A stretch of DNA of 44,651 nt, from assembly GCF_006345805.1 (NCBI RefSeq), contig NW_021834862.1, positions 1-44,651 on the forward strand. The letters are read 5' to 3'. Shown here in pieces: positions 4,537-44,651 of the stretch; position 1 is the first letter of the stretch; the number at the start of each line of letters is the position of its first letter. The notes beneath the pieces were generated by a model. The model searched no databases. It worked only from the letters and a program-made list of their open reading frames with translations, and was not told the DNA's origin. Source of the DNA: Octopus sinensis (taxonomy: Eukaryota). The position numbers were made by a program, and so were the translations under genes.

Positions 4537-4819
4537 GCTGCTCTATGTGTTTATTTATTGAATTATTCATCCTATATATATGAGTGTGTGTGTGTGTATG
4601 TATATAAATATATTTATATGCACATATGTATGTGTGTATACGCGTGTGTGTATATACAATAGAAATCTCCATTACCTACTCCCCACCCCAATCATTCCAC
4701 CTGTTTAATTAATTTCATTCCTTCTCTTCTCTTTTTCTGTGAGTTTTTCTTTTAATTCTTCACCACCCGACTCCCCTTTCAGACACCATTTTTAATGTTT
4801 TTATTCTTTTCTTTATCAG

Positions 4820-4974
4820 GTTAATCCTCGAAATGAATATGGTCAAACACTGCTGCACTGGGCCTGTTATTGGGGATCCTTGCACACTGTCGAGCTGTTG
4901 TTGGGTCACAATGGCATCGATGCCAATGTGGTTGCCAACAATGGAGACACACCACTGCATGAGGCAGTTCGGGG
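4820..4974 (+). CDS. Ankyrin/RING gene exon (VNPRNEYGQTLLHWAC...GDTPLHEAVRG)
   Basis: CTTTATCAG acceptor ending 4819 and GTAAGT donor at 4975. Two ankyrin motifs. Phase 0 to 2. Confidence 0.93.
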
Positions 4975-8446: not shown

Positions 8447-8483
8447 TTGCAAGTATGAAGTGGTGTCTGTGATGCTGTCCAAG
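8447..8483 (+). CDS. Ankyrin/RING gene exon ((G)CKYEVVSVMLSK)
   Basis: Long pyrimidine tract plus CAG ending 8446 and GTTAGT donor at 8484. Phase 2 to 0 fits both neighbouring exons and ankyrin helix 2. Confidence 0.82.
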
Positions 8484-9676: not shown

Positions 9677-9721
<45 letters not shown>

Positions 9722-9752
9722 ATATCTGTCTGTCTGTCTCTCTATCTCTCTG

Positions 9753-9794
<42 letters not shown>
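9163..9794. repeat. Compound (TATC)/(TGTC)/(TC) microsatellite
   Basis: Directly visible. Lies immediately 5' of LINE copy 1. Confidence 0.96.
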
Positions 9795-9800
9795 ATAGAC

Positions 9801-13926: not shown

Positions 13927-13956
13927 GTAACCTCTGTATTCTAATTCATTAGAACT

Positions 13957-23151: not shown

Positions 23152-23361
23152 GGTTCACTTCAGTTGGACATTAAGAACAAAATGGAAAGGACACCATTGC
23201 TTGAAGCCGTTTCCCAGGGTCACCTCGGAATGACACACCTGTTAATAGCCCTGGGTGCAAATGTAAATGCTGTTGATGGTGAAGGTAACAGTTGTTTGCA
23301 CCTAGCCATGGCAACAAAACATTTTAATTCCAAGGGTGCACCCTTGGATTTACTAAACGAA
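23152..23361 (+). CDS. Ankyrin/RING gene exon (GSLQLDIKNKMERTPLLEAVS...GNSCLHLA...LDLLNE)
   Basis: Pyrimidine tract plus AAG acceptor ending 23151 and GTAAGT donor at 23362. This start keeps 34-aa ankyrin spacing. Phase 0 to 0. Confidence 0.88.
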
Positions 23362-25016: not shown

Positions 25017-25192
25017 TGCTGTACTGCCCTTAACCTGAAAAAGAAGGAAATACTCTCTGGTATAGTGGTTGCGAGATATCTCGCCAGCCAGGGAGCGGAC
25101 TTTCACCATAAAAACAACAACAATAACACACCATTGGACCTCATTAAGGACCCAAATTTGAGAAGAAAATTAGAAGCATTTTTACCACCACA
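25017..25192 (+). CDS. Ankyrin/RING gene exon (CCTALNLKKKE...YLASQGADFHHKNNNNNTPLDLIKD...FLPP)
   Basis: TTTGTAG acceptor ending 25016 and GTAAGT donor at 25193. Open frame with a terminal ankyrin-like GAD...TPLDL motif. Phase 0 to 2. Confidence 0.9.
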
Positions 25193-27296: not shown

Positions 27297-27436
27297 ATGT
27301 TTGTTGTGCAGAAATAAAGAGGCCACAACAAAAGTTCATCCCTGTGAACACCTTCTGACATGTGAAGAATGTTCAAACGTTCCACTTAAACGATGCCTGA
27401 GGTGTTTGAAACCTGTAACAAGCAGAGGTCGAGTTG
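27297..27436 (+). CDS. C3HC4 RING-finger exon (CLLC...PCEHLLTCEEC...CLRC)
   Basis: GTCCACAG acceptor ending 27296 and GTAAG donor at 27437. Spacing C-x2-C-x11-C-x-H-x3-C-x2-C-x7-C-x2-C as in MIB/IAP-type RINGs. Phase 2 to 1. Confidence 0.93.
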
Positions 27437-28515
27437 GTAAGAATATTCTTTGCTGATCTGTCTGTTTGTCCTGCTTGTCCCATTGCCCTTATTGTGTAGA
27501 ATAATATACTTCATGTTGTTATGTAGACAGAGGTCTGCCATAATCTGGCAGATTTATGATAAAAGGTGTTCCTAGTGTCTGTTCTCTGTAATAGTATATC
27601 TCTCACACTACATCCACTAAACATTGATTTTATCCAAGTAGGAAACATGTCACACTTCAAGAGGGTTGTAGTCTGCAACATAAAAATAATGGAGGATTCT
27701 GCAAGATACTTAGTGAGTAACTGAAGTATCAATAAATCTCCATCAACTCTATAATTAATTATGAGTTATTAGAAGATAATTAAATACAACAGTACTTACA
27801 AGGACATCAGTGTCATCTTTGGTAAAGTATTAAAATTAGTAGAATATTTTAAAGGAGTAAAATTATATGTCACTAGTTTGAGAGACTTTAACACACAATT
27901 CCATGTTGTTATGTTTGTAATTGGAGGATATTAAGGCTAATAGAGACAGTTTTGTTTGTCAAGCAACCAGATCATGAAACCTTCAAATATATCCTGAATG
28001 AGGTGACATTCTGGTGAACTGTGAAGTTAAAATTAGGGATTATCAGCAACAATGTTTAACAAAAAGATTAGGTGTATGTATTACCTTCTTGAAGTGGTTG
28101 TGACATGTGTTTGTTGTTATATCTTTGATGAATAAATATGTTGACACTGGAATTAAACAGGTTGTTAGTGAAGATCAGGGTTTTGAGAATACATTTAGGG
28201 TCATAGATATAAGCAAGGAAACCAAAACCTACAGATTAACTGTTATTATGTGATATAATTACAGCATTGTTAGATTATGTAGGATATCTTAACAGAAAGA
28301 GGAAATTTACAAAGATCAACTAGAGTCGTATTGGAGCTAAATATTGGCTATTACATGGGTCCACTGTTGAAAGTATAAAAATTGACCAAAAGCATTATGA
28401 TCGCTGGTTGGCCATTGATGATATGAATGTCTCTCAATAATAAAATATAGATTATTAATAAATATGAAGAAATTGTGCTATAAATAACTATAAAACTTGG
28501 AAACACATATTTCAG

Positions 28516-28595
28516 AGAGTCCAAAGTTTGAAGAGAAGGGAATGCAGACTGTGGCAGAGACAGTTGATGAGTTTAAAATTAGAGATCTTAATTAA
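28516..28595 (+). CDS. Diverged exon X0 ((E)SPKFEEKGMQTVAETV); homologous donor reads ATGAGT, so it may read through to TAA
   Basis: TTTCAG acceptor ending 28515 is in phase with the RING exon. The position equivalent to the GT donor (28567) is AT. Read-through gives DEFKIRDLN*. Confidence 0.55.
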
Positions 28596-29270
28596 TTTCT
28601 ATAGATTTTACATTCACCTAAGCTATTTTGCTTATTAGAATGGTGGAGAACAGATCCCATTTCTAATTTCCATTTGAAAGTTTAGCTCTAAAGTAATTGT
28701 ATTAAAAATATTACTGAAATTTCATAAAGTCATGTTTAACATGTTTGGTAAAATGGATAAATTAAAAGCCACAATAGAGTTAATATTGTCTTCTATGGAA
28801 CTATAATTTATGTTTTTTAGGTGTAAACTCGTGAGTTAATAAAATAGTTGTTTGTTTTTCTACTAAGATTTTTCGTAAGTTTTCTGATAGGTTATTCTTG
28901 ATGTTGTTATGTAGCCAGATGTCTGTCGTAATATTTTGTATTTTCTGGGGTTGTGTACCCTCAATGTCTCTGGTTAGAATACATTTTGTAGTTGTAAATT
29001 AGAAAATTCTAATTAAATGTTAACTCTGTATAAGAATATTCATCATGAACTTAATTTTATTAAATGTTAAATTAAATATTGAACCATGAACATCTGTTTA
29101 TATTTAAACAAATTATTGGTGTTTATACAAAATATACAATCAGAAATTGAATTTGACTTGAATACACAAATCCTTCTTTGTAACTATATATAATATACAC
29201 TTATTACATTGTTTGAACAACATTTACCATCCATATAGTCATTCTTTTTCTCACTCTTGTTAGATTTTAG

Positions 29271-29305
29271 ATGATATTAATGCTAAAAGAGGCACGGTTT
29301 TCTGA
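29271..29305 (+). CDS. Candidate terminal exon Y0 ((D)DINAKRGTVF*)
   Basis: Pyrimidine tract plus TTTTAG acceptor ending 29270. Phase-1 entry gives 11 codons then TGA. Confidence 0.5.
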
Positions 29306-29995
29306 GTGTTTCACCCTTTGGTCTTGATTGTTGCGTTCAAATTATTTAATGAAAGATAGTCATTGTTATTTGACCAGGAAATGAATTAATCATTAGTATT
29401 TGGCAGTGGACTTGGTTATATCTTTCTTCGTTTGCTCATGGAACTACCATAATATTAGCTGTGCTGAGACACAATCATATTCATAGTAATGAAGGTTATA
29501 TGTTCTTTACTCAGATTATATACAATCTATATTGATATCTAGTATTGCACCGTCAAGCACAGTGCCATTGTATCACATATATACCCAATTATCATGATAA
29601 TTAATAAGCTATAATTCATTAACTCTCTTACATTTGTATGTATGAAATGTTAACATATTTTGTCATAGGAACATCGTGTACCCTCACATTACATTTTATA
29701 TCTTGTTAGGGATCATGTTGGGGAAGGGTGTATGGAATTTGGCTTGTGGAGATGTTTTTTAGGGGACAGATTGTGTGCGGGTTGGAGGGTATGCATATAA
29801 AGGACATGTCTTTATGGGTGCAGTTTTACTTAATTAGAGAGGAATGTTGATTAGTGAATTCTAGATATGAGAGGACAGTGCCATGCCATAGATTTGGCAG
29901 TTATAAGAAAAGAAAGACAATGCTAAGAGAAAACTGTCATCAAGTGTTAATTAAATGAGATAATTGCAACATTGTTAGAATATTTAATGTGTTTT

Positions 29996-30032
<37 letters not shown>

Positions 30033-30252
30033 GGTGGATTTAGAAATGTTAGTCTGTTTTATTGTGGACATATTGAGCTACTACATGGGACCACTGTAGA
30101 AAGTACAGAAATATTGACCAAAACCATAGTGGTCAACATTTGACCATTAACGACAGGAATTGAATGTCTCACAATAAAAAGATAGAGTTTAATAAAAATA
30201 AAGATAAAGAAATTTTATTATTAAATGTAAAACTTGGAAATATTTATTTCAG

Positions 30253-30330
30253 AGGCTCCAAAGTTTGAAGACAGGTGTGTACAAACAGAGGCTATATGTC
30301 AGGAATTAGGGGCTGCATCTCAGGCAATTG
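30253..30330 (+). CDS. Repeated 78-nt phase 1-1 exon X1 (APKFEDRCVQTEAICQELGAASQAI)
   Basis: TATTTATTTCAG acceptor, GTGAGT donor at 30331, no stop, length divisible by 3. Confidence 0.72.
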
Positions 30331-30582
30331 GTGAGTATAAAATAATAGTTCCCAATTGATTTCTGTAAGGTTTTCTTCCCCCGAGTATATTGTGCTCGAA
30401 AGAATAACTGGAAACAGCTTCCATTCCTATTTTCCAATTGAACGATTATCTGTATAATAATTGAATTAAAGATATCGATTTACTGAGAGTTTATGAAAGA
30501 CCCATTGAGGTTAATGCTGTTGGTAATAATGTTCAAATTAGAAGACACAATAGAGTTAATTTTGTCATTTGGTCACGGAACT

Positions 30583-30994
30583 CATCATCATCATCATCAC
30601 ATCATTATCATTCTCCTCCTCATCATCATCGTTTAACGTCCGTTTTATAGTAGCATGGGTCGGACGATTTCACTGGCAAGGCAGTAGGCTGCGCCAGGCT
30701 CCAATGTGATCTGGCAAGGTTTCCACATATGTATGCCATTCCTAATGCCAACCACTCCGAGAGTGTGGTGGGTGCCTTTTACGTGCCACCGACACAGGAG
30801 CCAGCCGGTGTGGGGGCTGGCATCGACCACATTCGGATGGTGCTTTTTACGTACCACCTGCACAGGGAACCAGTCAGGCGGAATGGTAACAAACCACGCT
30901 TGAATGGTACTTATACGTGTCATCGGCACGGGTGTCAGTCAGGCGGCACTGGCATCGGTCACAACTCCAATTTCCATTTTGATTTCGATCTTGA
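30583..30994 (-). mobile_element. RTE-type LINE 3' tail with (GAT)n end, unit 1; equivalents at 35718-36114, 38166-38555 and 43259-43656
   Basis: (CAT)n followed by TTTAACRTCCGTTT...ATGCCATTCCTAATGCCAACC. Contiguous with recognisable RTE coding sequence in the B units. Confidence 0.7.
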
Positions 30995-31780
30995 ATTGCT
31001 TTTGATTTTTCATTTCTCTTATTGCCTGGTAGACTATGATGAAAACGAGGGGTTTAGGAATGATCCCTAGTGAACTCCTACTTCTATCCGGAATTCTTCA
31101 CTATACTCATTGCCGATCCTCACCTTACTACAGGGCCTCTTCAACTCTTATAATCGCTCGTCAATCCCTAGTTTCCACATTAGCTGTAAAAAGGATTCTA
31201 TTAAATATTCCACTGAAATTTCATAAAATCAAGGTTAACGTGGTTGGTAAAATGGATAAATAAGAAGACATAATAGAGTTAATGATGTCTTTTAGGACAG
31301 AGAACTAAAACATTTCGTTGTTTATTTGTAAACAGGTGAGTTAACGAGAAAGATTTTGTTTCTTTTACTACTAAGGTCTTTCCAAAGTTTTCTCATAGGT
31401 TATTGTTGTTGTTATTGTTATGTAGCCAGATGTCTGTCAGGATACGTTGTTTAGGTACGTACCCTGAATGTCTCATGTCAGAATAACTTTGTTATAAATT
31501 AAAGAAATTAAAAATCAAATCTCTAAGTTTGTAAGTATAATGATCATTAACGTTGATTAAATATTAAATTTAGTATTGAACGGTGAACATCTGTGTGCAT
31601 TTAAACAAAACATTGGTGTTGACATAAGATATAAAGATAGGAATTAAATATGAGTTCCCTGTGTGACTTGAACTCACAAATCCTTGTTTGTAACTATATA
31701 TAATATACACTTATTACATTGTTTGAACAACATTTACCATCCATATAGTCATTCTTTTTCTCACACTTGTTAGATTTTAG

Positions 31781-31815
31781 ATGATATTAATGCTAAAAGA
31801 GGCCCAGTTTTCTGA
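31781..31815 (+). CDS. Candidate terminal exon Y1 ((D)DINAKRGPVF*)
   Basis: Same acceptor context and TGA as Y0. Confidence 0.45.
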
Positions 31816-32731
31816 ATGTTTCACCCTTTGGTCTTGATTGTTGCGTTCAAATTATTTAATGAAAGATAGTCATTGTTATTTGACCAGGAAATGAATTAAT
31901 CATTAGTATTTGGCAGTGGACTTGGTTATATCTTTCTTCGTTTGCTCATGGAACTACCATAATATTAGCTGTGCTGAGACACAATCATATTCATAGTAAT
32001 GAAGGCTATATGTTCTTTACTCAGATTATATACAATCTATATTGATATCTAGTATTGCACCGTCAAGCACAGTGCCATTGTATCACATATATACCCAATT
32101 ATCATGATAACTAATAAGCTATAATTCATTAACTCTCTTACATTTGTATGTATGAAATGTAAATTTTATTTTCATAGGGATCGTGTACCCTCACCTAACA
32201 TCTTATATTTGTAGGGATCATGTTGTGGAGATGATTTTCAGGGGACAGATTGTCTGTGGGATGGAGCGTATGCACATAAAGGACATCTTTATGACCTCCG
32301 TTTTACTTAATTAGAGAGAATGTTGATTAGTGAATTCTAGAGATGAGAGGACTGTGCCATGCCATAGATTTGGCACAGTTATAAGAAAAGAAAGACAATG
32401 CTAAGAGAAAACTCTTATCAAGTGTTAATTAAATGAGATAATTGCAACATTGTTAGAATATTTAATGTGTTTTTAAAGAGAGAGGGAGAGAGAGAGAGAG
32501 ACAGAAGTGAGGGTGGATTTAGAAATGTTAGTCTCTTTTATTGTGGACATATTGGGCTATTACATGGGACCACTGTAGAAAGTACAGAAATATTGACCAA
32601 AACCATAGTGGTCAACATTTGACCATTAACGACAGAAATTGAATGTCTCACAATAACAAGATAGAGTTTAATAAAAATAAAGATAAAGAAAGTTTCTTTT
32701 TAAATTTAAGACTTGGAAATATTTATTTCAG

Positions 32732-32809
32732 GGGCTCTAAAGTGTGAGGACAGGTGTGTACAAACAGAGGCTACATGTCTGGAATTAGGGGCTGCATCTC
32801 AGGCAATAG
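32732..32809 (+). CDS. Repeated exon X2 (ALKCEDRCVQTEATCLELGAASQAI)
   Basis: Intact AG and GTGAGT, 78 nt, open frame. Confidence 0.68.
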
Positions 32810-33061
32810 GTGAGTATAAAATAATAGTTCCCAATTGATTTCTGTAAGGTTTTCTTCCCCCGAGTATATTGTGCTTGAAAGAATAACTGAAAACAGCTTC
32901 CATTCCTATTTTCCAATTGAACGATTATCTGTATAATAATTGAATTAAAGATATCGATTTACTGAGAGTTTATGAAATACCCATTGAGGTTAATGCTGTT
33001 GGTAATAATGTTCAAATTAGAAGACACAATAGAGTTAATTTTGTCATTTGGTCACAGAACT

Positions 33062-33905
33062 CATCATCATCATCATCATCATCATCATTATCATTTAACA
33101 TCCGTTTCTTATGGCGGCATGGGTCGGACGATTTCACTGGCAAGGCAGTAGGCTGCGTCAGGCTGCAATGTGATCTGGCAAGGTTTCCACATATGTATGC
33201 CATTCCTAACGCCAACCACTCCGAGAGTGTGGTGGGTGCTTTTTACGTGCCACCGACACAGGAGCCAGTTGAAGTTGGGGCTGGCATCGACGACGTTCGG
33301 AAGGTGCTTTTTACGTGCCACTTGCACAGGGAACCAGTCAGGCGGCACTGGCAACAAACAATGTTTGAATGGTACTTATTACGTGCCACCGGCATGGGTG
33401 CCAGCCAGGCGGCACTGGCATCGGCCGTAATTACAATTTCCATTTTGATTTCGATCTTGATTTGATTTTGATTTGTGATTTCTGGTTTTTGGTTTTACTT
33501 GACTCAGAAATTCTTCTCAAGCGCAACTTATCACTCTGTGATTCAAGGGTACTTTTAAAAAGGGCTGGTTATGCAACACTGGTATATGCTACAGCTCTGA
33601 TCTCACTTCACTTGCCGGGTCCTCTTAATCACGTCATATTTACAGAGGTCCCTGTCTCTTGCCATTACCTCTGTGAGGCCCAACATTCGAAGGTCGTTTC
33701 ACCACGTCATCCCCTGTCTTCCTGGGTCACTCCTTTGCACGGGTTCCTTCCACTGTTAGGGTGTAACACTTCTTCCCACAGCTCTCCTCATCCATACACA
33801 TGACCATACCAGTGCAGTTGTCTCTCTTGTACACCACATCTGATGCTCTTATGTCTAACACTTCTCTCCGGCCTCTTCACTCTGCCTTGTGTACACACTG
33901 ACATC
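33062..33905 (-). mobile_element. Longer RTE-type LINE 3' fragment, B unit
   Basis: The minus strand encodes, with frameshifts, SIRCGVQERQLHWYGHV / MDEESCGKKCYTLTVEG / DLRMLGLTEVMARDRDL, followed by a 3'UTR and (GAT)n tail. Confidence 0.75.
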
Positions 33906-34155
33906 GTTGCGTTCAAATTATTTAATGGAAGTTAGTCATTGTTATTTGACCAGGAAATGAATTAATCATTAGTATTTGGCAGTGGACTTGGTTATATCTT
34001 TCTTCGTTTGCTCATGGAACTACCATAATATTAGCTGTGCTGAGACACAATCATATTCATTGTAATGAAGGCTATATGTTCTTTACTCAGATTATATACA
34101 ATCTATATTGATATCTAGTATTGCACCGTCAAGCACTGTGCCATTGTATCACATA

Positions 34156-34725
34156 CACTTGCGTCGGCAATTAATTAGCACGTCTCAAATTTCTACATTT
34201 TCTTACATTTTCTTAATTTAATTAACTTATTATCAGAAACGAACTCGTTTTTAATCAAAAATTTATTAAAACATATCCCAGCACACCACATAATTGATAT
34301 TAATCGTGAAATTTAGTCAATATCTTGTTGCTCCTCCTTTGGCAGCAATGACAGCTGCTACGCGGGTCGGCATGCTGTCTATGAGTGCCTGCAGGTACTG
34401 TGCAGGGATGGCCCCTCATGCAGCAAGAAGTGCCCCAAACAGCTCGTGTCGGTTCCTGTATTGCTGCACATTCAAATCCCTACCCAATCGACTCCAGAGG
34501 TTCTCAATAGGGTTCAGGTCAGGTGACTGGCCAGCACGTACTCCTCGCCACCAAAGAGGTATCCCGTACTATCTCAACGTACTTTGCTGCGTTGATGTTG
34601 CCTTCGACGGCATAGAGCCGCCCAACACAACTGTAGCTGAACGCCCCTCACACCATCAGACCACCCCCACCATGCTTCATGGTGAGCAAATCAAGGGTGG
34701 TGCTAATTAATTTCTGACGGTAGTG
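34156..34725 (-). mobile_element. Internally deleted Tc1-family DNA transposon with TIRs and TA target duplication
   Basis: 26-bp imperfect TIRs at 34156-34181 and 34700-34725, flanked by TA. The minus strand reads QSPDLNPIENLW...SMPTRVAAVIAAKGGATRY* with one internal TGA. The empty site is present in A units. Confidence 0.92.
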
Positions 34726-35118
34726 TATATACCCAATTATCATGATAATTAATAAGCTATAATTCATTAACTCTCTTACATTTGTATGTCTGAAATGTAA
34801 ACTTATTTTGTCATAGGAACATCGTGTACCCTCACCTTACATTTTACAACTTGTTAGGGATCATGTTGTGGAGATGATTTTCAGAGGACAGATTGTGTGC
34901 GGGGTGGAGGGTATGCACATAAAGGACAGTCTTTATGACCTCAGTTTTACTTAATTAGAGAGGAATGTTGATTAGTGAATTCTAGAGATGAGAGGACAGT
35001 GCCATGCCATAGATTTGGCATAGTTATAAGAAAAGAAAGACAAAGCTAAGAGAAAACTCTTATCAAGTGTTAATTAAATGAGATAATTAGTACGTTGTTA
35101 GAATATTTAATGTGTTTC

Positions 35119-35172
<54 letters not shown>

Positions 35173-35389
35173 GAATTTAGGAATGTTAGTCTGTTTTATT
35201 GTGGACATATTGGGCTATTACATGGGACCACTGTAGAAAGTACAGAAATATTGACCAAAACCATAGTGGTCAACATTTGACCAGTAACGACAGGAATTGA
35301 ATGTCTCACAATAACAAGATAGAGTTTAATAAAAATAAAGATAAAGAAAGTTTCTTTTTAAATGTAAAACTTGGAAATATTTATTTCAG

Positions 35390-35467
35390 GGGCTCCAAAG
35401 TTTGAAGACAGGTGTGTACAAACAGAGGCTACATGTCAGGAATTAGGGGCTGCATCTCAGGCAATTG
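35390..35467 (+). CDS. Repeated exon X3 (APKFEDRCVQTEATCQELGAASQAI)
   Basis: Intact AG and GTGAGT, 78 nt, open frame. Confidence 0.68.
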
Positions 35468-35716
35468 GTGAGTATAAAATAATAGTTCCCAATTGATTTC
35501 TGTAAGGTTTTCTTCCCCCGAGTATATTGTGCTTGAAAGAATAACTGAAAACCGCTTCCATTCCTATTTTCCAATTGAACAATTATCTGTATAATAATTG
35601 TATTAAAGATATCGATTTACTGTGAGTTTATGAAATACCCATTGAGGTTAATGCTGTTGGTAATAATGTTCAAATTAGAAGACACAATAGAGTTAATTTT
35701 GTCATTTGGACAGAAC

Positions 35717-35750
<34 letters not shown>

Positions 35751-36892
35751 TTAACATCCTTTTTTTATCGTGGCATGGGTCGGACGATTTCACTGGCAAG
35801 GCAGTAGGCTGCGCCAGGCTCAATGTGATCTGGCAAGGTTCCACATATGTATGCCATTCCTAATGCCAACCACTCCGAGAGTGTGGTGGGTGCCTTTTAC
35901 GTGCCACCGACACAGGAGCCAGCCGGGGTGGGGGCTGGCATCGACCACGTTCGGATGGTGCTTTTTACGTGCCAGCGGCACAGGGAACTAGTCAGGCGGC
36001 AGTGACAAGGACCTATGCTTCTATGGTACTTATAACGTGCCACAGGAACAGGTGCCAGTCAGGCGGCACTGGCATCGGTCACAACTACAATTTCCATTTT
36101 GATTTCGATCTTGAATTGCTTTTGATTTGTCATTTCTGTTATTGCATGGTGGACTATGATGAAAACGAGGGGTTTAGGAATGATCCCTAGTGAACTCCTA
36201 CTTCTATCCGGAATTCTTCACTATACTCATTGCCAATCCTCACCTTACTACAGGGCCTCTTCAACTCTTATAATCGCTCGTCAATCCCTAGTTTCCGCAT
36301 TAGCTGTAAAAAGGATTCTATTAAATATTCCACTGAAATTTCATAAAATCAAGGTTAACGTGGTTGGTAAAATGGATGAATAAGAAGACATAATAGAGTT
36401 AATGATGTCTTTTAGGACAGAGAACTAAAATAGTTTGTTGTTTATTTGTAAACAGGTGAGTTACCGAGAAAGATTTTGTTTCTTTTGCTACTAAGGTATT
36501 TCCTAAGTTTTCTGATAGGTTATTGTTGTTGTTATGTAGCCAGATGTCTGTCAGGATATGTTGTTTAGGTACGTACCCTAAATGTCTCATGTCAGAATAA
36601 CTTTGTTATAAATTAAAGAAATTAAAAATCAAATCTCTAAGATTGTAAGTATAATGATCATTAACGTTGATTAAATATTAAATTTAGTATTGAACGGTGA
36701 ACATGTTTACATTCAAACAAAATATTGGTGTTGACATAAAATATAAAGAGAGGAATTAAATATGAGTTCCCTGTGTGACTTGATCTCACAAATCCTTGTT
36801 TGTAATTATATATAGTATACACTTATTACATTGTTTGAACAACATTTACCATCCATATAGTCATTCTTTTTCTCACAAATGTTAGATTTTAG

Positions 36893-36927
36893 ATGATATT
36901 AAAGCTAAAAGAGGCACAGTTTTCTGA
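36893..36927 (+). CDS. Candidate terminal exon Y3 ((D)DIKAKRGTVF*)
   Basis: Same acceptor context and TGA as Y0. Confidence 0.42.
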
Positions 36928-37835
36928 GTGTTTCACCCTTTGGTCTTGATTGTTGCGTTCAAATTATTTAATGAAAGATAGTCATTGTTATTTGACCAGG
37001 AAATGAATTAATCATTAGTATTTGGCAGTGGACTTGGTTATATCTTTCTTCGTTTGCTCATGGAACTACCATAATATTAGCTGTGCTGAGACACAATCAT
37101 ATTCATTGTAATGAAGGTTATATGTTCTTTACTCAGATTATATACAATCTATATTGATATCTAGTATTGCACCGTCAAGCACAGTGCCATTGTATCACAT
37201 ATATACCCAATTATCATGATAATTAATAAGCTATAATTCATTAACTCTCTTACATTGTATGTATGAAATGTAAATTTTTTGTCATAGGGACATCGTGTAC
37301 CCTCACCTAACATTTATATCTTGTTAGGGATCATGTTGTGGAGATGATTTTTAGGGGACAGATTGTGTGTGGGATGGAGCGTATGCACATAAAGGACATC
37401 TTTATGACCTCAGTTTTACTTAATTAAAGAAGAATGTTGATTAGTGAATTCTAGAGATGAGAGGACTGTGCCATGCCATAGATTTGGCACAGTTATAAGA
37501 AAAGAAAGACAAAGCTAAGAGAAAACTCTTACCAAGTGTTAATTAAATGAGATAATTGGTACGTTGTTAGAATATTTTATGTGTTTCTAGAGAGAGAGAG
37601 AGAGAGAGAAGTAAGGGTGGATTTAGAAATGTTAGTCTGTTTTATTGTGGACATATTGGGCTATTACATGGGACCCCTGTAGAAAGTACGGAAATATTGA
37701 CCAAAACCATAATGGTCAACATTTGACCAGTAACAACAGAAATTGAATGTCTCACAATAACAAGATAGAGTTTAATAAAAATAAAGATAAAGAAAGTTTC
37801 TTTTTAAATGTAAAACTTGGAAATATTTATTTCAG

Positions 37836-37913
37836 GGGCTCCAAAGTTTGAGGACAGGTGTGTACAAACAGAGGCTACATGTCAGGAATTAGGGGCTGCA
37901 TCTCAGGCAATTG
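37836..37913 (+). CDS. Repeated exon X4 (APKFEDRCVQTEATCQELGAASQAI)
   Basis: Intact AG and GTGAGT, 78 nt, open frame. Confidence 0.68.
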
Positions 37914-39333
37914 GTGAGTATAAAATAATAGTTCCCAATTGATTTCTGTAAGGTTTTCTTCCCCCGAGTATATTGTGCTTGAAAGAATAACTGAAAACAG
38001 CTTCCATTCCTATTTTCCAATTGAACAATTATCTGTATAATAATTGTATTAAAGATATCGATTTACTGTGAGTTTATGAAATACCCATTGAGGTTAATGC
38101 TGTTGGTAATAATGTTTAAATTAGAAGACACAATAGAGTTAATTTTGTCATTTGGTCACAGAACTCATCATCATCATCATCATCATCATTTAACATCCGT
38201 TTCTTATCGTGGCATGGGTCGGACGATTTCACTGGCAAGGCAGTCGGCTGCGCCAGGCTCCAATGTGATCTGGCAAGGTTTCCACATATGTATGCCATTC
38301 CTAATGCCAACCACCTCGAGAGTGTGGTGGGTGCCTTTTACGAGCCACCGGCACAGGAGTCAGTCGGGGTGGGGGCTGGCATCGACCACATTTGGGTGGT
38401 GCTTTTTACGTGCCAGCGGCACAGGGAACCAGTCAGGCGGCAGTGACAAGGACCTATGCTTCTATGGTACTTATAACGTGACACAGGAACAGGTGCCAGT
38501 CAGGCGGCACTGGCATCGGTCACAACTACAATTTCCATTTTGATTTCGATCTTGAATTGCTTTTGATTTGTCATTTCTCTATTGCCTGGTGGACTATGAT
38601 GAAAACGAGGGGTTTAGGAATGATCCTATTGAACTCCTACTTCTATCCGGAAATCTTCACTATACTCATTGCCGATCCTCACCTTACTACAGGGCCTCTT
38701 CAACTCTTATAATCGCTCGTCAATCCCTAGTTTCCGCATTAGCTGTAAAAAGGATTCTATTAAATATTCCACTGAAATTTCATAAAATCAAGGTTAACGT
38801 GGTTGGTAAAATGGATAAATAAGAATACATAATAGAGTTAATGATGTCTTTTAGGACAGAGAACTAAAACATTTTGTTGTTTATTTGTAAACAGGTGAGT
38901 TAACGAGAAAGTTTTTGTTTCTTTTACTACTAAGGTCTTTCCAAAGTTTTCTGATAGGTTATTGTTGTTGTTATTGTTATGTAGCCAGATGTCTGTCAGG
39001 ATATGTTGTTTAGGTACGTACCCTGAATGTCTCAGGTCAGAATAACTTTGTTATAAATTAAATAAATTAAAAATCAAATCTCTAAGATTGTAAGTATAAT
39101 GATCATTAACGTTGATTAAATATTAAATTTACTATTGAACGGTGAACATGTTTACATTTAAGCAAAATATTGGTGTTGACATAAAATATAAAGAAAAGAA
39201 TTAAATATGAGTCCCCTGTGTGACTTGAACTCACAAATCCTTGTTTGTAACTATATATAATATACACTTATTACATTGTTTGAACAACATTTACCATCCA
39301 TATAGTCTTCTTTTCACTCTTCTTAGATTTTAG

Positions 39334-39368
39334 ATGATATTAATGCTAAAAGAGGCACAGTTTTCTGA
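39334..39368 (+). CDS. Candidate terminal exon Y4 ((D)DINAKRGTVF*)
   Basis: Same acceptor context and TGA as Y0. Confidence 0.42.
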
Positions 39369-40290
39369 GTGTTTAACCCTTTGGTCTTGATTGTTGCGTT
39401 CAAATTATTTAATGAAAGATAGTCATTGTTATTTGACCAGGAAATGAATTAATCATTATTATTTGGCAGTGGACTTGGTTATATCTTTCTTCGTTTGCTC
39501 ATGGAACTACCATAATATTAGCTGTGCTGAGACACAATCATATTCATAGTAATGAAGGTTATATGTTCTTTACTCAGATTATATACAATCTATATTGATA
39601 TCAAGTATTGCACCGTCAAGCACAGTGCCATTGTATCACATATATACCCAATTATCTCGATAACTAATAAGCTATAATTCATTAACTCTCTTACATTTGT
39701 ATGTATGAAATGTAAATTTATTTTGTCATAGGGACATCGTGTACCCTCACCTAACATCTTATATCTTGTTAGGGATCATGTTGTGGAGATGATTTTTAGG
39801 GGACAGATTGTGTGTGGGATGGAGCGTATGCACGTAAAGGACATCTTTATGACCTCAGTTTTACTTAATTAGAGAAGAATGTTGATTAGTGAATTCTAGA
39901 GATGAGAGGACTGTGCCATGCCATAGATTTGGCACAGTTATAAGAAAAGAAAGACAAAGCTAAGAGGAAACTCTTATCAAGTGTTAATTAAATGAGATAA
40001 TTGCAACATTGTTAGAATATTTAATGTGTTTTTAAAGAGAGAGTGAGAGAGAGAGAGAGACAGAAGTGAGGGTGGATTTAGAAATGTTAGTCTCTTTTCT
40101 TGTGGACATATTGGGCTATTACATGGGACCACTGTAGAAAGTACAGAAATATTGACCAAAACCATAATGGTCAACATTTGACCATTAACGACAGAAATTG
40201 AATGTCTCACAATAACAAGATAGAGTTTAATAAAAATAAAGATAAAGAAAGTTTCTTTTTAAATGTAAAACTTGGAAATATTTATTTCAG

Positions 40291-40368
40291 GGGCTCCAAA
40301 GTGTGAGGACAGGTGTGTACAAACAGAGGCTACATGTCAGGAATTAGGGGCTGCATCTCAGGCAATAG
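40291..40368 (+). CDS. Repeated exon X5 (APKCEDRCVQTEATCQELGAASQAI)
   Basis: Intact AG and GTGAGT, 78 nt, open frame. Confidence 0.68.
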
Positions 40369-40619
40369 GTGAGTATAAAATAATAGTTCCCAATTGATTT
40401 CTGTAAGGTTTTCTTCCCCCGAGTATATTGTGCTTGAAAGAATAACTGAAAACAGCTTCCATTCCTATTTTCCAATTGAACAATTATCTGTATAATAATT
40501 GAATTAAAGATATCGATTTACTAAGATTTTTTGAAATACCCATTGAGGTTAATGCTGTTGGTAATAATGTTCAAATTAGAAGACACAATAGACTTAATTT
40601 TGTCATTTGGTCATGGAAC

Positions 40620-40620
<1 letters not shown>

Positions 40621-40656
<36 letters not shown>

Positions 40657-41460
40657 TTAACATCCGTTTCTTATGGCGGCATGGGTCGGACGATTTCACT
40701 GGCAAGGCAGTAGGCTGCGTCAGGCTGCAATGTGATCTGGCAAGGTTTCCACATATGTATGCCATTCCTAACGCCAACCACTCCGAGAGTGTGGTGGGTG
40801 CTTTTTACGTGCCACCGACACAGGAGCCAGTTGAAGTTGGGGCTGGCATCGACCACGTTCGGAAGGTGCTTTTTACGTGCCACCTGCACAGGGAACCAGT
40901 CAGGCGGCACTGGCAACAAACAATGTTTGAATGGTACTTATTATGTGCCATCGGCACGGGTGCCAGCCAGGCGGCACTGACATCGGCCATCATTACAATT
41001 TGCATTTTGATTTCGATCTTGATTGATTTTGATTTGTGATTTGGTTTTTTGTTTTACTTGACTCAGAAATTCTTCTAGCGCAACTTATCACTCTGTGATT
41101 CAAGGGTACTTTTAAAAAGGGCTGGTTATGCAACACTGGTATAGGCTACAGCTGTGATCTCACTTCACTTGCCGGGTCCTCTTAATCACGTCATTTACAG
41201 AGGTCCCTGTCTCTTGCCATTACCTCTGTGAGGCCCAACATTCGAAGGTCGTTTCACCACGTCATCCCCTGTCTTCCTGGGTCACTCCTTTCCACGGGTT
41301 CGTTCCACTGTTAGGGTGTAACACTTCTTCCCACAATTCTCCTCATCCATACCCATAACCATACCAGTGCAGTTGTCTCTCTTGTACACCACATCTGATG
41401 CTTCTTATGTCTAACACTTCTCTCCGGCCTCTTCACTCTGCCTTGTGTGCACACCGACAT
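40621..41460 (-). mobile_element. Longer RTE-type LINE 3' fragment, second B unit
   Basis: Near-identical to 33062-33905 with the same junction. Confidence 0.75.
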
Positions 41461-41708
41461 CGTTGCATTCAAATTATTTAATAGAATATAGTCATTGTTA
41501 TTTGACCAGGAAATGAATAATCATTAGTATTTGGCAGTGGACTTGGTATATCTTTCTTCGTTGCTCATGGAACTACCATAATATTAGCTGTGCTGAGACA
41601 CAATCATATTCATAGTAATGAAGGTTATATGTTCTTTACTCAGATTATATACAATCTATATTGATATCTAGTATTGCACCGTCAAGCACAGTGCCATTCT
41701 ATCACATA

Positions 41709-42273
41709 CACTTGCGTCGGAAATTAATTAGCACTTCTCAAATTTCTACATTTTCTTACATTTTCTTAATTTAATTAACTTATTATCAGAAACGAACTTG
41801 TTTTTAATCAAAAATTTATTAAAACATATCCCAGCACACCACATAATTGATATTAATCGTGAAATTTAGTCAATATCTTGTTGCTCCTCCTTTGGCAGCA
41901 ATGACAGCTGCTACGCGGGTCGGCATGCTGTCTATGAGTGCCTGCAGGTACTGTGCAGGGATGGCCCCTCATGCAGCAAGAAGTGCCCCAAACAGCTCGT
42001 GTCGGTTCCTGTATTGCTGCACATTCAAATCCCTACCCAATCGACTCCAGAGGTTTTCAATAGGGTTCAGGTCAGGTGACTGGCCAGCACGTACTCCTCG
42101 CCACCAAAGAGGTATCCCGTACTATCTCAAAGTACTTTGCTGCGTTGATGTTGCCTTGACGGATAGAGCCGCCCAACACAACTGTAGCTGAACGCCCCTC
42201 ACACCATCAGACCACCCCCACCATGCTTCATGGTGAGCAAATCAAGGGTGCTAATTAATTTCTGACGGTAGTG
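41709..42273 (-). mobile_element. Second copy of the Tc1 deletion derivative
   Basis: Same insertion site, TIRs and internal TGA as 34156-34725. Confidence 0.92.
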
Positions 42274-42929
42274 TATATACCCAATTATCATGATAATTAA
42301 TAAGCTATAATTCATTAACTCTCTTACATTTGTATGTCTGAAATGTAAACTTATTTTGCCATAGGAACATCGTGTACCCTCACCTTACATTTTATATCTT
42401 GTTAGGGATCATGTTGGGGAAGGGTGTATGGAATTTGGCTTGTGGAGATGATTTTTAGGGGACAGATTGTGTGCGGGGTGGAGGGTATGCACATAAAGGA
42501 CATGTCTTTATGGGCTCAGTTTCACTTAATTAGAGAGGAATGTTGATTAGTGAATTCTAGAGATGAGAGGACTGTGCCATGCCATAGATTTGGCAGTTAT
42601 AAGAAAAGAAAGACAATGCTAAGAGAAAACTGTCAAGTGTTAATTAAATGAGATAATTGCAACATTGTTAGAATATTTAATGTGTTCTTAGAGAGAGAGA
42701 GAGGGAGAGGGTGGATTTAGGAATGTTAGTCTGTTTTATTGTGGACATATTGAGCTATTACATGGGACCACTGTAGAAAGTACAGAAATATTGACCAAAA
42801 CCATAATGGTCAACATTTGACCATTAACGACAGGAATTGAATGTCTCACAATAACAAGATAGAGTTTAATAAAAATAAAGATAAAGAAAGTTTCTTTTTA
42901 AATGTAAAACTTGGAAATATTTATTTCAG

Positions 42930-43007
42930 GGGCTCCAAAGTTTGAAGACAGGTGTGTACAAACAGAGGCTACATGTCAGGAATTAGGGGCTGCATCTCAG
43001 GCAATTG
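42930..43007 (+). CDS. Repeated exon X6 (APKFEDRCVQTEATCQELGAASQAI)
   Basis: Intact AG and GTGAGT, 78 nt, open frame. Confidence 0.68.
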
Positions 43008-43257
43008 GTGAGTATAAAATAATAGTTCCCAATTGATTTCTGTAAGGTTTTCTTCCCCCGAGTATATTGTGCTTGAAAGAATAACTGAAAACAGCTTCCA
43101 TTCCTATTTTCCAATTGAACGATTATCTGTATAATAATTGAATTAAAGATATCGATTTACTGAGAGTTTATGAAATACCCATTGAGGTTAATGCTGTTGG
43201 TAATAATGTTCAAATTAGAAGACACAATAGAGTTAATTTTGTCATTGGTCACAGAAC

Positions 43258-43291
<34 letters not shown>

Positions 43292-44435
43292 AATCATTAA
43301 CCGTTTCTTATGGCGGCATGGGTCGGACGATTTCACTGGCAAGGCAGTAGGCTGCGCCAGGCTCCAATGTGACTGGCAAGGTTTCCACATATGTATGCCA
43401 TTCCTAATGCCAACCACTCCGAGAGTGTGGTGGGTGCTTTTTACGTGCCACCGACACAGGAGCCAGTCGGGGGGGGGCTGGCATCGACCACGTTCGGATG
43501 GTGCTTTTTACGTGCCAGCGGCACAGGGAACTAGTCAGGCGGCAGTGACAAGGACCTATGCTTCTATGGTACTTATAACGTGACACAGGAACAGGTGCCA
43601 GTCAGGCGGCACTGGCATCGGTCACAACTACAATTTCATTTTGATTTCGATCTTGAATTGCTTTTGATTTGTCATTTCTCTTATTGCCTGGTGGACTATG
43701 ATGAAAACGAGGGGTTTAGGAATGATCCCTAGTGAACTCCTACTTCTATCCGGAATTCTTCACTATACTCATTGCCGATCCTCACCTTACTACAGGGTCT
43801 TCAACTCTTATAATCGCTCGTCAATCCCTAGTTTCCGCATTAGCTGTAAAAAGGATTCTATTAAATATTCCACTGAAATTTCATAAAATCAAGGTTAACG
43901 TGGTTGGTAAAATGGTTAAATAAGAAGACATAATAGAGTTAATGATGTCTTTTAGGACAGAGAACTAAAACATTTTGTTGTTTATTTGTAAACAGGTGAG
44001 TTAACGAGAAAGATTTTGTTTCTTTTACTACTAAGGTCTTTCCTAAGTTTTCTCATAGGTTATTGTTGTTGTTGTTATGTAGCCAGATGTCTGTCATGAT
44101 ATGTTGTTTAGGTACGTACCCTGAATGTCTCAGGTCAGAATAACTTTGTTATAAATTAAAGAAATTAAAAATCAAATCTCTAAGATTATAAGTATAATGA
44201 TCATCAACGTTGATTAAATATCAAATTTAGTATTGAACGGTGAACATCTGTTTGCATTTAAACAAAATATTGGTGTTGACATAAATTATAAAGATAGGAA
44301 TTAAATATGAGTTCCCTGTGTGACTTGATCTCACAAATCCTTGTTTGTAATATATATATATACACTTATTACATTGTTTGAACAACATTTACCATCCATA
44401 TAGTCATTCTTTTTCTCACTCTTGTTAGATTTTAG

Positions 44436-44470
44436 ATGATATTAATGCTAAAAGAGGCACAGTTTTCTGA
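44436..44470 (+). CDS. Candidate terminal exon Y6 ((D)DINAKRGTVF*)
   Basis: Same acceptor context and TGA as Y0. Confidence 0.42.
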
Positions 44471-44651
44471 GTGTTCACCCTTTGGTCTTGATTCTTGCGT
44501 TCAAATTATTTAATGGAAGTTAGTCATTGTATTTGACCAGGAAATGAATTAGTCATTAGTATTTGGCAGTGGACTTGGTTATATCTTTCTTCGTTTGCTC
44601 ATGGAACTACCATAATATTAGCTGTGCTGAGACACATTCATATTCATAGTA

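What the first reader, a model, noticed from the sequence alone, without database searches (positions are those of the whole stretch)
30270..30290. Each repeated exon encodes an LC8/DYNLL-type binding motif (DRCVQTE): possible valency dial on an E3 ligase
Seen: all six X copies keep D-R-C-V-Q-T-E unchanged, while neighbouring residues vary (P/L, F/C, I/T, Q/L). The diverged X0 has E-K-G-M-Q-T-V. Established: the LC8 hub protein binds linear motifs of roughly [DS]-K-x-[TVI]-Q-[TV]-[DE] in disordered tails, and multivalent partners such as ASCIZ/ATMIN use tandem sites. RING ligases are often activated by dimerisation. Inference: exon amplification may tune the number of LC8 sites and so the dimerisation or activity of this ankyrin-RING protein. 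The copies are young, so invariance over 21 nt is weak evidence of selection.
Basis: partly seen in the sequence, partly recalled or inferred. Interest (0 to 1): 0.7.

Follow-up and report, generated by a model that had tools for sequence, protein, structure and literature searches.

The report
Repeated octopus linker exons, LC8-like motif
Six very young tandem copies of a 78-base exon behind the RING finger of an octopus-specific ankyrin-RING gene each encode a peptide that looks like a docking site for the dimerising hub protein LC8, but their sameness reflects recent copying, not selection, and binding is untested.

Summary
GACAGGTGTGTACAAACAGAG (DRCVQTE) occurs six times, each inside a 78-nt phase-1/1 exon with intact splice sites, one per ~2.5-kb tandem unit downstream of the RING exon of an intact ankyrin-RING gene. 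X0 reads EKGMQTV.

**For:**
- EDRCVQTE meets every published LC8 positional rule.
- In an LC8Pred-style scorer built from the published training set it sits at the median of validated binders and above 94% of non-binders.
- Octopus paralogues show isoforms that differ by whole cassettes, so a copy-number "dial" exists.

**Against or changed:**
- In paralogues the repeats are not a tail. They form a linker between the RING and a C-terminal death domain.
- Introns are as conserved as the exon, and exon changes are 12 non-synonymous to 3 synonymous.
- The whole unit, introns included, is 91–97% identical in two O. vulgaris paralogues whose RING/ANK are only 33–47% identical to the window's.
- Five of 16 distinct long-unit variants break the QT anchor.
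- In the older 17-aa units the whole unit is conserved. Q alternates with K, and +2 is usually the disfavoured V.
- Disorder could not be shown.

LC8 binding is plausible (about 0.4 in vitro). A selected valency dial is unlikely (about 0.15).

The parts
4799..4974 (+). Ankyrin-repeat exon (…NPRNEYGQTLLHWACYWGSLHTVELLLGHNGIDANVVANNGDTPLHEAVRG). The 5' boundary is approximate. The donor is GG|gtaagt.
   Evidence: tblastn of family proteins. The spliced translation is open.
8447..8483 (+). 37-nt mini-exon (G)CKYEVVSVMLSK, joining ankyrin exons in phase. It is homologous to the mini-exon at L003:6112-6148.
   Evidence: Pattern search plus the L003 control. The frame was verified.
23152..23361 (+). 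Ankyrin-repeat exon (GSLQLDIKNKMERTPLLEAVSQGHLGMTHLLIALGANVNAVDGEGNSCLHLAMATKHFNSKGAPLDLLNE).
   Evidence: Pfam Ank.
25017..25192 (+). Last ankyrin-type exon (CCTALNLKKKEILSGIVVARYLASQGADFHHKNNNNNTPLDLIKDPNLRRKLEAFLPP-Q).
27297..27436 (+). RING exon (CLLCRNKEATTKVHPCEHLLTCEECSNVPLKRCLRCLKPVTSRGRV) of the IAP/MIB type, zf-C3HC4_3. It ends in phase 1 at the donor GTTG|gtaaga. If unspliced it ends …GRVGKNILC*.
   Evidence: Pfam 27.5 bits against a cutoff of 27.
28516..28595 (+). X0, an old short-type unit (ESPKFEEKGMQTVAETVDEFKIRDLN*). The acceptor is intact, the donor is lost (GATGAGT), and there is an in-frame TAA. It is usable only as a terminal exon. Its octamer EEKGMQTV scores as an LC8 non-binder.
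   Evidence: An O. sinensis model (P0019) ends in the homologous exon.
30253..30330 (+). X1 cassette exon, (E)APKFEDRCVQTEAICQELGAASQAI. The finding's 21-mer is at 30270-30290.
32732..32809 (+). X2 cassette exon, (G)ALKCEDRCVQTEATCLELGAASQAI, in a unit of subtype B.
35390..35467 (+). X3 cassette exon, (G)APKFEDRCVQTEATCQELGAASQAI.
37836..37913 (+). X4 cassette exon, with the same peptide as X3.
40291..40368 (+). X5 cassette exon, (G)APKCEDRCVQTEATCQELGAASQAI, in a unit of subtype B.
42930..43007 (+). X6 cassette exon, with the same peptide as X3. The window ends 1.6 kb later, inside unit 6, so the array may continue.
28696..44651 (+). Tandem array of ~2.45-2.66-kb units (exon plus intron) of subtypes A-B-A-A-B-A. 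Identity is 96-97% within a subtype. An older degenerate unit (71-74% identity) surrounds X0 at 28341-28790.
   Evidence: Self-BLAST and alignment of the units.

Best explanation
The six DRCVQTE copies are very young tandem duplicates of a 78-nt, phase-1/1 cassette exon. Each sits in a ~2.5-kb repeat unit downstream of the RING exon of an intact ankyrin-RING gene that belongs to a family found only in Octopus.

In the paralogues, homologous exons build a modular linker of variable length between the RING and a C-terminal death domain. Two types exist: a 26-aa "long" unit and older 17-aa "short" units. Unit number is set in two ways, by genomic copy number (0 to at least 6) and by skipping whole cassettes. 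By homology, the window gene can end in one of three ways:
- straight after the RING (…GKNILC*);
- in X0 (…DEFKIRDLN*);
- after one or more X units, either by donor read-through (GEYKIIVPN*) or by splicing on to death-domain exons that would lie beyond the window.

The array grew by unequal crossing-over. The unit was also copied or converted between paralogues very recently, and that recency is why the 21 nt are invariant. It is not evidence of selection.

The long unit presents one octamer, EDRCVQTE, that is a sequence-level match to the LC8/DYNLL binding motif. This match is shown. The most likely specific biochemical activity beyond acting as a spacer is therefore weak-to-moderate LC8 docking, which would zip two chains in register and bring their RINGs and death domains together. 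This step is inferred. I put measurable in-vitro binding at about 0.4, and a selected valency-tuning role at about 0.15.

The conserved feature of the repeat family is the whole unit, P-K-[F/S]-E-[E/D]-K-x-V-[Q/K]-T-V-x-E, not the LC8 anchor alone.
For: - **Exon anatomy:** six exact copies, identical splice sites and a symmetric phase. The spliced CDS from the ankyrin exons through X6 is open.
- **Family architecture:** ANK, RING, 0 to n units, then a death domain, in O. sinensis, O. vulgaris and O. bimaculoides.
- **Cassette isoforms:** isoforms of single genes differ by whole cassettes, for example P0087, P0082 and P0085 with 0, 1 and 2 units; P0075, P0036 and P0074 with 3, 4 and 5; and P0018, P0007, P0001, P0003 and P0010.
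- **Alternative endings:** all three are seen in paralogue models. P0031 ends after the RING, P0019 in an X0-like exon, and P0004, P0005 and P0006 in GEYKIIVPN.
- **Youth:** units are 96-97% identical within a subtype. The exon is no more conserved than its introns, with 14/78 variable columns against 73/499, Fisher p=0.50. Exon changes are 12 non-synonymous to 3 synonymous.
- **Spread between paralogues:** the unit's introns are 91-97% identical in L001 and L002, whose RING/ANK are only 33-47% identical to the window's and which lie on different sequence records of the assembly. They are 85-94% identical in O. sinensis L003.
- **LC8 match:** the positional rules are met, VQT binders are known, the score is at the 56th percentile of binders and above 94% of non-binders, and a random octamer reaches that score with P=4e-5.
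- **Related units with near-ideal motifs:** KDKETQTQ, ADKGVQTD, EDKGVQTD and EDKCVQTE.
Against: - No gene model exists for this particular locus, and no transcript data could be examined. Inclusion of X1-X6 is therefore inferred from paralogues.
- No death-domain exon lies in the window.
- The first acceptor after the RING belongs to X0, which terminates the protein.
- For the LC8 step:
  - Five of 16 distinct long-unit variants break the anchor (VKK twice, VKT twice, VQR), and one more has W at -2.
  - In the 44 short-type units, Q is K in 10, +1 is A in 6, and +2 is V in 24.
  - Only about 7 of the 44 reach binder grade.
  - Some family members have no units at all.
  - Disorder is not shown. 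The AF2 model was uninformative, and the charge-hydropathy estimate is borderline, on the folded side.
  - My scorer is a re-implementation, not the official LC8Pred.
  - With hundreds of known linear-motif classes, a post-hoc match to one of them carries a look-elsewhere penalty.
Confidence: 0.75

Rival explanations
1. Each X unit is a functional LC8/DYNLL site. Exon amplification and cassette splicing are selected to tune LC8 valency, and through it the dimerisation and activity of the RING ligase (and, as now seen, of its death domain).
For: - The motif fits the rules and scores as a binder.
- Six sites at a regular 26-aa period leave 18 residues between octamers. Whether that spacing suits multivalent LC8 binding was not checked here.
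- Isoforms and genes differ in cassette number.
- Diverged units with textbook motifs exist: DKGVQTD, DKCVQTE and KDKETQTQ.
- The LC8 groove is strictly conserved across eukaryotes.
Against: - There is no constraint on the anchor in the young copies. The only motif change among 10 genomic copies breaks the anchor. Motif against rest of exon gives p=0.096, and motif against introns p=0.34.
- VKK, VKT and VQR variants are kept in annotated proteins.
- Whole paralogue arrays are built of VKT or VQA units, as in P0048 and P0038.
- The ancestral +2 residue is V, which is disfavoured.
- Some members have no units.
- Disorder is unproven.
Confidence: 0.15
2. X1-X6 in this window are inert by-products of a recent segmental amplification. 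Transcripts of this gene end right after the RING or in X0, so the downstream copies are rarely or never included and have no function here.
For: - X0 comes first, has a good acceptor, no donor and an in-frame stop, and AATAAA/ATTAAA signals follow it.
- The RING exon can also terminate by read-through, as in the O. bimaculoides model P0031.
- This locus has no gene model.
- The copies evolve neutrally.
Against: - All six copies keep perfect acceptors, donors and open frames.
- Near-identical exons are included in many annotated paralogue isoforms, up to four in a row.
- The copies are so young that intact splice sites are not strong evidence either way.
Confidence: 0.15
3. The conserved function of the repeat lies in the whole 16-17-aa unit, P-K-[F/S/C]-E-[E/D]-K-x-V-[Q/K]-T-V-x-E-[S/P]-V, and has nothing to do with LC8. 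It could be a different partner, a small structured element (some paralogues carry CPxC knuckles every 17 residues, suggesting zinc binding), or lysine acceptor sites. On this view the LC8-like look of the long unit is incidental.
For: - Column conservation extends from -8 to +6. P(-8) at 36/44 and K(-3) at 38/44 are more conserved than Q(0) at 29/44.
- Q/K alternation and V at +2 fit LC8 poorly.
- CPKC/CPRC recurs in the units of P0048, P0049 and P0038.
- Q-to-K variants of the long unit create VKTE and VKKE. From my own knowledge, these match the psi-K-x-E SUMO consensus.
- The charge-hydropathy estimate is not on the disordered side.
Against: - No known family or structure matches the unit.
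- The AF2 model gives no confident fold for the region.
- The long unit has replaced the C-terminal half of the short unit and has lost the V at +2 of the short-unit consensus, so whatever binds the short unit may not bind it.
Confidence: 0.2

Closest known systems
Multivalent LC8/DYNLL clients with tandem TQT-type motifs (ASCIZ/ATMIN, Nup159, Chica, RSP3)
   Same: Several copies of a [D/S]-[K/R]-x-[T/V/I]-Q-[T/V]-[D/E]-like octamer sit in a row in a non-domain segment. The octamer EDRCVQTE scores like a typical validated binder. If it binds, the expected effect is in-register pairing of two chains.
   Different: - Binding is untested.
- The sites are exact recent copies made by exon duplication, not diverged motifs within one exon.
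- The anchor is not conserved across the family.
- Disorder is not shown.
- The host is a RING plus death-domain protein. Two full-text searches turned up no RING or death-domain LC8 client or description of this Octopus family.
Mind bomb E3 ligases (MIB1/MIB2), the name given by automatic annotation
   Same: Ankyrin repeats are followed by an IAP/MIB-type C3HC4 RING, Pfam zf-C3HC4_3.
   Different: Full-length paralogues have no MIB/HERC2 or ZZ domain. They have a single RING, and they carry a linker of repeats plus a C-terminal death domain. They are not mind bomb orthologues.
Tandem cassette-exon duplication generating repeat proteins with splice-variable repeat number
   Same: The exon is symmetric in phase and a multiple of 3 nt long, and was duplicated together with its intron. 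Isoforms differ by whole units.
   Different: - The copies are extremely young, at 96-97% identity including the introns.
- The unit has also moved between anciently diverged paralogues on different sequence records.
- Each copy can double as a terminal exon by donor read-through.
Ankyrin-repeat plus death-domain proteins (ankyrins, ANKDD1) and RING/death-domain signalling adaptors
   Same: ANK repeats and a C-terminal death domain lie in one chain. Some family members are auto-named ankyrin-1/3-like or RIPK1-like for that reason.
   Different: A RING and a repeat linker sit between the ANK repeats and the death domain. The family was found only in Octopus.

Membership tests
LC8/DYNLL-binding linear motif (TQT type) | Anchor of a mid-sized H-bonding or hydrophobic residue, then Q, then T/V, at positions -1, 0 and +1. 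| tested here: met
   V-Q-T is present in all six copies. The rule is from PMC6607443. Validated VQT binders are MAST1, SON and ZFPM1.
LC8/DYNLL-binding linear motif (TQT type) | Flank preferences: polar or D at -4, large and often basic at -3, no bulky aromatic at -2, and D/E/P at +2. | tested here: met
   The flanks are D, R, C and E, checked against the rules. X0 (E, K, G and V at +2, with M at -1) fits poorly.
LC8/DYNLL-binding linear motif (TQT type) | Predictor score in the range of binders. | tested here: met
   In a PSSM rebuilt from the LC8Pred training set (leave-one-out AUC 0.82), EDRCVQTE scores 19.5. That is the 56th percentile of binders and above 94% of non-binders. It is not the official LC8Pred.
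LC8/DYNLL-binding linear motif (TQT type) | The motif lies in an intrinsically disordered, accessible segment. | tested here: inconclusive
   The AF2 model has low pLDDT in the X region, but equally low pLDDT in the known ANK and RING folds. The charge-hydropathy estimate is borderline, on the folded side. No PDB relative was found.
LC8/DYNLL-binding linear motif (TQT type) | Evolutionary conservation of the anchor relative to its surroundings. | tested here: not met
   Exon and introns are equally variable, and exon changes are 12 non-synonymous to 3 synonymous. The anchor is broken in 5 of 16 long-unit variants. In the short units Q is present in 29 of 44 and K in 10 of 44.
LC8/DYNLL-binding linear motif (TQT type) | Direct, Q/T-dependent binding to the LC8 dimer groove. 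| not testable with these tools
   This needs ITC or a pull-down, or an AlphaFold-Multimer complex. Chimeric or outside sequences cannot be submitted here.
Multivalent LC8 client (ASCIZ/Nup159 type) | Several binding-competent motifs in tandem on one chain. | tested here: inconclusive
   Six predicted sites at a 26-aa period are encoded. Their joint inclusion in one transcript of this gene is unverified.
Mind bomb (MIB1/MIB2) E3 ligases | N-terminal MIB/HERC2 and ZZ domains plus ANK repeats and C-terminal RING(s). | tested here: not met
   A Pfam scan of the full-length paralogues P0048 and P0036 finds only Ank, zf-C3HC4_3 and Death.
RING-type E3 ligase (zf-C3HC4_3 class) | C3HC4 RING matching the family model above its curated cutoff. 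| tested here: met
   The window's spliced product scores 27.5 bits against a cutoff of 27. Paralogues score 38-39 bits.
Death-domain protein | A death domain downstream of the repeats. | tested here: inconclusive
   It is present in most paralogues (PF00531) and is the only confident part of the AF2 model. No death-domain exon lies inside the window, and the array runs off the window's end.
Tandemly duplicated, alternatively spliced cassette exons | Symmetric phase, length divisible by 3, conserved splice sites, and isoforms differing by whole units. | tested here: met
   for the window. for the isoforms of paralogues.

The most novel reading that the evidence does not exclude
In an Octopus-specific family of ANK-RING-death-domain proteins, the number of LC8 docking sites between the RING and the death domain is set by two things: ongoing exon amplification or exchange between paralogues, and combinatorial cassette splicing. 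LC8 valency would then act as an evolvable, splice-programmable switch for pairing RINGs and death domains. In other words, genome and spliceosome together would tune the oligomerisation threshold of a ubiquitin/cell-death signalling module.
Probability: 0.12. Interest if true: 0.75.

Novelty: new member of a known kind. Interest (0 to 1): 0.4.

Why it matters
If the long units bind LC8, this would be a case where the valency of a hub-protein client is set by exon copy number and cassette splicing, in a protein that joins a ubiquitin ligase to a death domain. That would give a simple, testable model of how oligomerisation thresholds in cell-death or innate-immune signalling can evolve quickly.

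Even without LC8, the locus documents three things:
- an Octopus-restricted, expanded ANK-RING-linker-death-domain family that is mis-named "MIB-like";
- very recent tandem exon amplification;
- sharing of a 3' module (linker unit plus death domain) between paralogues whose 5' halves diverged long ago.

The practical lesson for the scan is that invariance among young repeat copies carries no information about selection. The test has to come from older paralogous units, where the anchor is not specially conserved.

Tried and rejected
- **AF2 structure of P0001 with a 20-sequence family alignment.** Mean pLDDT was 47. Only the death domain was confident, and the ANK and RING folds scored as low as the X region. 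It is unusable as a disorder test.
- **PDB sequence search with the X array.** No hit.
- **Pfam on the linker.** Only a sub-threshold PCF11 RFEGP-repeat hit (27.8 bits against a cutoff of 43). I dismissed it as repeat-composition noise.
- **Genomic look-ups of P0008, P0007, P0001 and P0004.** These failed because only the longest isoform of each gene is indexed. P0032, P0016 and P0012 worked.
- **Search for the window's own gene model.** None exceeded about 90% identity.
- **Transposon exonisation as the source of X.** Rejected. The X peptide was found only in this gene family, always after the RING and in the same phase.
- **Other linear-motif readings, checked by eye from my own knowledge.** These were TRAF2 (P/S/A/T-x-Q/E-E), TRAF6 (P-x-E-x-x-Ar/Ac), LIR (F/W/Y-x-x-L/I/V), KFERQ-like and caspase sites. 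None fits the conserved columns.
- **Statistical test for extra conservation of the 21-nt motif.** Not significant, at p=0.096 against the rest of the exon and p=0.34 against the introns.
- **Literature search for this Octopus family or for an LC8 link to a RING or death-domain protein.** Nothing relevant.

Full report
**1. Observation**

The 21-mer GACAGGTGTGTACAAACAGAG occurs six times on the + strand, at 30270, 32749, 35407, 37853, 40308 and 42947. Spacing is 2446-2658 nt, and none is expected by chance.

Each copy sits 17 nt into a 78-nt segment bounded by an identical acceptor (tttatttcag|) and donor (|gtgagtat). The phase is 1-1, so any number of copies keeps the frame.

X0 (28516-28595) reads ESPKFEEKGMQTVAETVDEFKIRDLN*. 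It keeps an acceptor, but its donor is GATGAGT, so it can only be a terminal exon. Every X copy, if its donor is not used, reads on to GEYKIIVPN*.

**2. The gene**

Upstream on the same strand lie:
- ankyrin exons at about 4799-4974, 23152-23361 and 25017-25192;
- a 37-nt mini-exon at 8447-8483, found by pattern search and confirmed against a paralogue;
- a RING exon at 27297-27436.

Joined with X1-X6, these give one open frame. Pfam calls the product Ank plus zf-C3HC4_3, at 27.5 bits against a cutoff of 27.

No annotated protein matches this locus above about 90%. Its transcript structure is therefore inferred by homology.

**3. The family**

A search with the RING plus X tail found 33 proteins, all from Octopus sinensis, O. 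vulgaris or O. bimaculoides and all auto-named MIB1/MIB2-like. Their sequences show the architecture ANK, RING, a variable number of X-type units, then a death domain. The repeats are therefore an inter-domain linker rather than a tail.

Full-length members have no MIB/HERC2 or ZZ domain, so they are not mind bomb orthologues.

Isoforms of single genes differ by whole cassettes. Examples are 0, 1 and 2 units in P0087, P0082 and P0085, and 3, 4 and 5 units in P0075, P0036 and P0074. P0001, P0003, P0010 and P0013 show the same pattern.

Some models end by donor read-through in GEYKI… (P0004, P0005, P0006, P0024, P0027). One ends in an X0-like exon (P0019). One ends right after the RING (P0031).

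An exhaustive HMMER search with a tail-only member gave 48 representatives. Every one I checked was from Octopus, apart from a single coral protein that has a death domain only. No death-domain exon lies in the window, and the array runs off the 3' end.

**4. Is the invariance meaningful? No.**

- *Within the window:* The six units fall into two subtypes in the order A-B-A-A-B-A, 96-97% identical within a subtype. About 10% of all 21-nt windows are invariant. The longest invariant run is 67 nt, and it matches the fully invariant stretch of intron just after the donor in the copy alignment.
- *Across ten genomic copies* (six in the window and four from three paralogue loci): 14 of 78 exon columns vary, against 53 of 249 in the upstream intron and 20 of 250 in the downstream intron. 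Exon against introns gives p=0.50. Motif (1/21) against the rest of the exon (13/57) gives p=0.096. Motif against introns gives p=0.34.
- *Type of change:* Exon changes are 12 non-synonymous to 3 synonymous, about the neutral ratio. The single change inside the motif is T to R, which breaks the anchor.

**5. Recent spread between paralogues**

The intron sequence of the unit is 91-97% identical in two O. vulgaris paralogues, L001 and L002. Their RING/ANK are only 33-47% identical to the window's, and they lie on different sequence records of the assembly. The unit is 85-94% identical in an O. sinensis paralogue, L003.

The near-identity of the long X peptide across the family therefore reflects recent copying or conversion, and is not evidence of constraint.

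The X peptide was found only in this family, which argues against a transposon-borne exon.

**6. LC8 motif test**

The published rules (PMC6607443) are:
- a mid-sized residue at -1 and +1, with Q at 0;
- P, D or E at +2, with hydrophobic residues disfavoured;
- no bulky aromatic at -2;
- a large, often basic residue at -3;
- a polar residue or D at -4.

E-D-R-C-V-Q-T-E meets all of them. The Rapali consensus [D/S]K x [T/V/I] Q [T/V] [D/E] (PMC3078936) is met except that R replaces K.

Validated binders with a VQT anchor exist. I rebuilt an LC8Pred-style scorer from the published 79 binders and 32 non-binders. Its leave-one-out AUC was 0.82. Scores were as follows:

| Octamer | Source | Score | Reading |
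|---|---|---|---|
| EDRCVQTE | X1-X6 | 19.5 | 56th percentile of binders, above 94% of non-binders |
| EEKGMQTV | X0 | 0.8 | non-binder range |
| EDRCVAAE | QT-to-AA control | 0.3 | non-binder range |

A random octamer reaches 19.5 with P=4e-5. The LC8 groove is reported as strictly conserved across 58 eukaryotes.

**7. Evidence from older units**

An HMM of the unit core collected 58 distinct 16-mers across the family. Conservation among the 44 non-long units is:

| Position | Commonest residue | Count (of 44) |
|---|---|---|
| -8 | P | 36 |
| -7 | K | 29 |
| -4 | E/D | 38 |
| -3 | K | 38 |
| -1 | V | 32 |
| 0 | Q (K in 10) | 29 |
| +1 | T (A in 6) | 29 |
| +2 | V | 24 |
| +4 | E | 27 |

The whole 16-17-residue unit is conserved. 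The position most critical for LC8 is not the best-kept one, and the usual +2 residue is one that LC8 disfavours.

By my count only about 7 of the 44 reach binder grade: KDKETQTQ, ADKGVQTD, EDKGVQTD, SDKEVQTA and the EDKCVQTE variants. Whole arrays in some paralogues consist of VKT or VQA units, as in P0048 and P0038.

Among the long-unit variants, VKK (twice), VKT (twice) and VQR break the anchor, and one variant has W at -2. Some members join the RING directly to the death domain with no units.

**8. Disorder**

The AF2 model of P0001 was confident only for the death domain. The known ANK and RING folds scored as low as the X region, so the model says nothing about disorder. A charge-hydropathy estimate puts the unit on the borderline or folded side, the same as the death-domain control. 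No PDB relative was found. This prerequisite for a linear motif remains open.

**9. Verdict**

The sequence match to an LC8 site is real, the match is respectable, and a copy-number and splicing "dial" of cassettes exists in the family.

However, the repeats form a RING-to-death-domain linker. Their identity is due to youth. Evolutionary evidence does not single out the LC8 anchor. Binding, disorder and even inclusion of these six exons in this gene's mRNA are all unverified.

My estimates are:
- about 0.4 that the peptide binds LC8 measurably in vitro;
- about 0.15 that LC8 valency tuning is a selected function;
- about 0.75 for the structural and evolutionary description given as the best explanation.

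No described counterpart was found in the literature searched. I classify it as a new, lineage-specific member of known kinds: cassette-exon repeat linkers, and candidate multivalent LC8 clients.

Noticed in passing
window 28696-44651; L001:54694-56995; L002:18288-24019 and 29235-31042; L003:15239-17709: The ~2.5-kb X unit, introns included, is shared at 85-97% identity between paralogues whose ANK/RING halves are only 33-50% identical and which lie on different sequence records. In some cases the death-domain peptide is also near-identical between divergent heads (P0016, P0008, P0011). This looks like recent 3'-module exchange, by gene conversion or segmental shuffling, within the family.
   Followed up: partly
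window 30270-44651: The six units are of two subtypes that differ in a replaced middle segment. They are arranged A-B-A-A-B-A, which suggests that a three-unit (~7.6 kb) super-block was itself duplicated (U1-U4 96.2%, U2-U5 97.4%, U3-U6 97.2%).
   Followed up: partly
window 28516-28595: X0 is an older short-type unit whose surrounding intron is 71-74% identical to the young unit. It has lost its 5' splice site and carries an in-frame stop, so it acts as a potential alternative terminal exon ahead of X1-X6. An O. sinensis model (P0019) ends in the homologous exon.
   Followed up: partly
paralogue proteins P0048, P0049, P0038, P0085 (not in window): Short units in some paralogues start with CPKC or CPRC, giving a CxxC knuckle every 17 residues (for example ECPRCREKTVKTVAESF repeated). 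Adjacent units could form zinc-ribbon-like sites. This would make the linker structured rather than disordered.
   Followed up: no
paralogue proteins P0001, P0010, P0065, P0011, P0017, P0029, P0002: The recurrent Q-to-K variants of the long unit turn VQTE into VKTE or VKKE. From my own knowledge, these match the psi-K-x-E SUMOylation consensus.
   Followed up: no
window 9066-11120, 13031-17390, 18143-18885: A non-LTR (LINE-type) retrotransposon lies in the 14.7-kb intron between the mini-exon (8447-8483) and the second ankyrin exon (23152). It has an endonuclease-like ORF and an 804-aa reverse-transcriptase ORF (14791-17205). Two further partial copies of its 3' part are present, and each block is flanked by (TCTA)n or (TATC)n microsatellites.
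   Followed up: no
window 1293-2411 and 5606-7984; also 11-893: Very long trinucleotide microsatellites, (ATG)n of ~1.1 kb and (GAT)n of ~2.4 kb, and a purine-rich 160-190-nt tandem repeat lie inside introns of the same gene.
   Followed up: no
window 935-1093 and 2456-2563: Further upstream ankyrin-type coding pieces lie on the + strand. The first matches P0014 residues 3-55 at 68%. The gene therefore probably starts at or before the window's 5' end.
   Followed up: no
whole window: No annotated protein in the searched collection matches this locus's ANK+RING exons above about 90%, although dozens of paralogues are annotated. The locus appears to be unannotated, or to come from an assembly without gene models.
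   Followed up: yes
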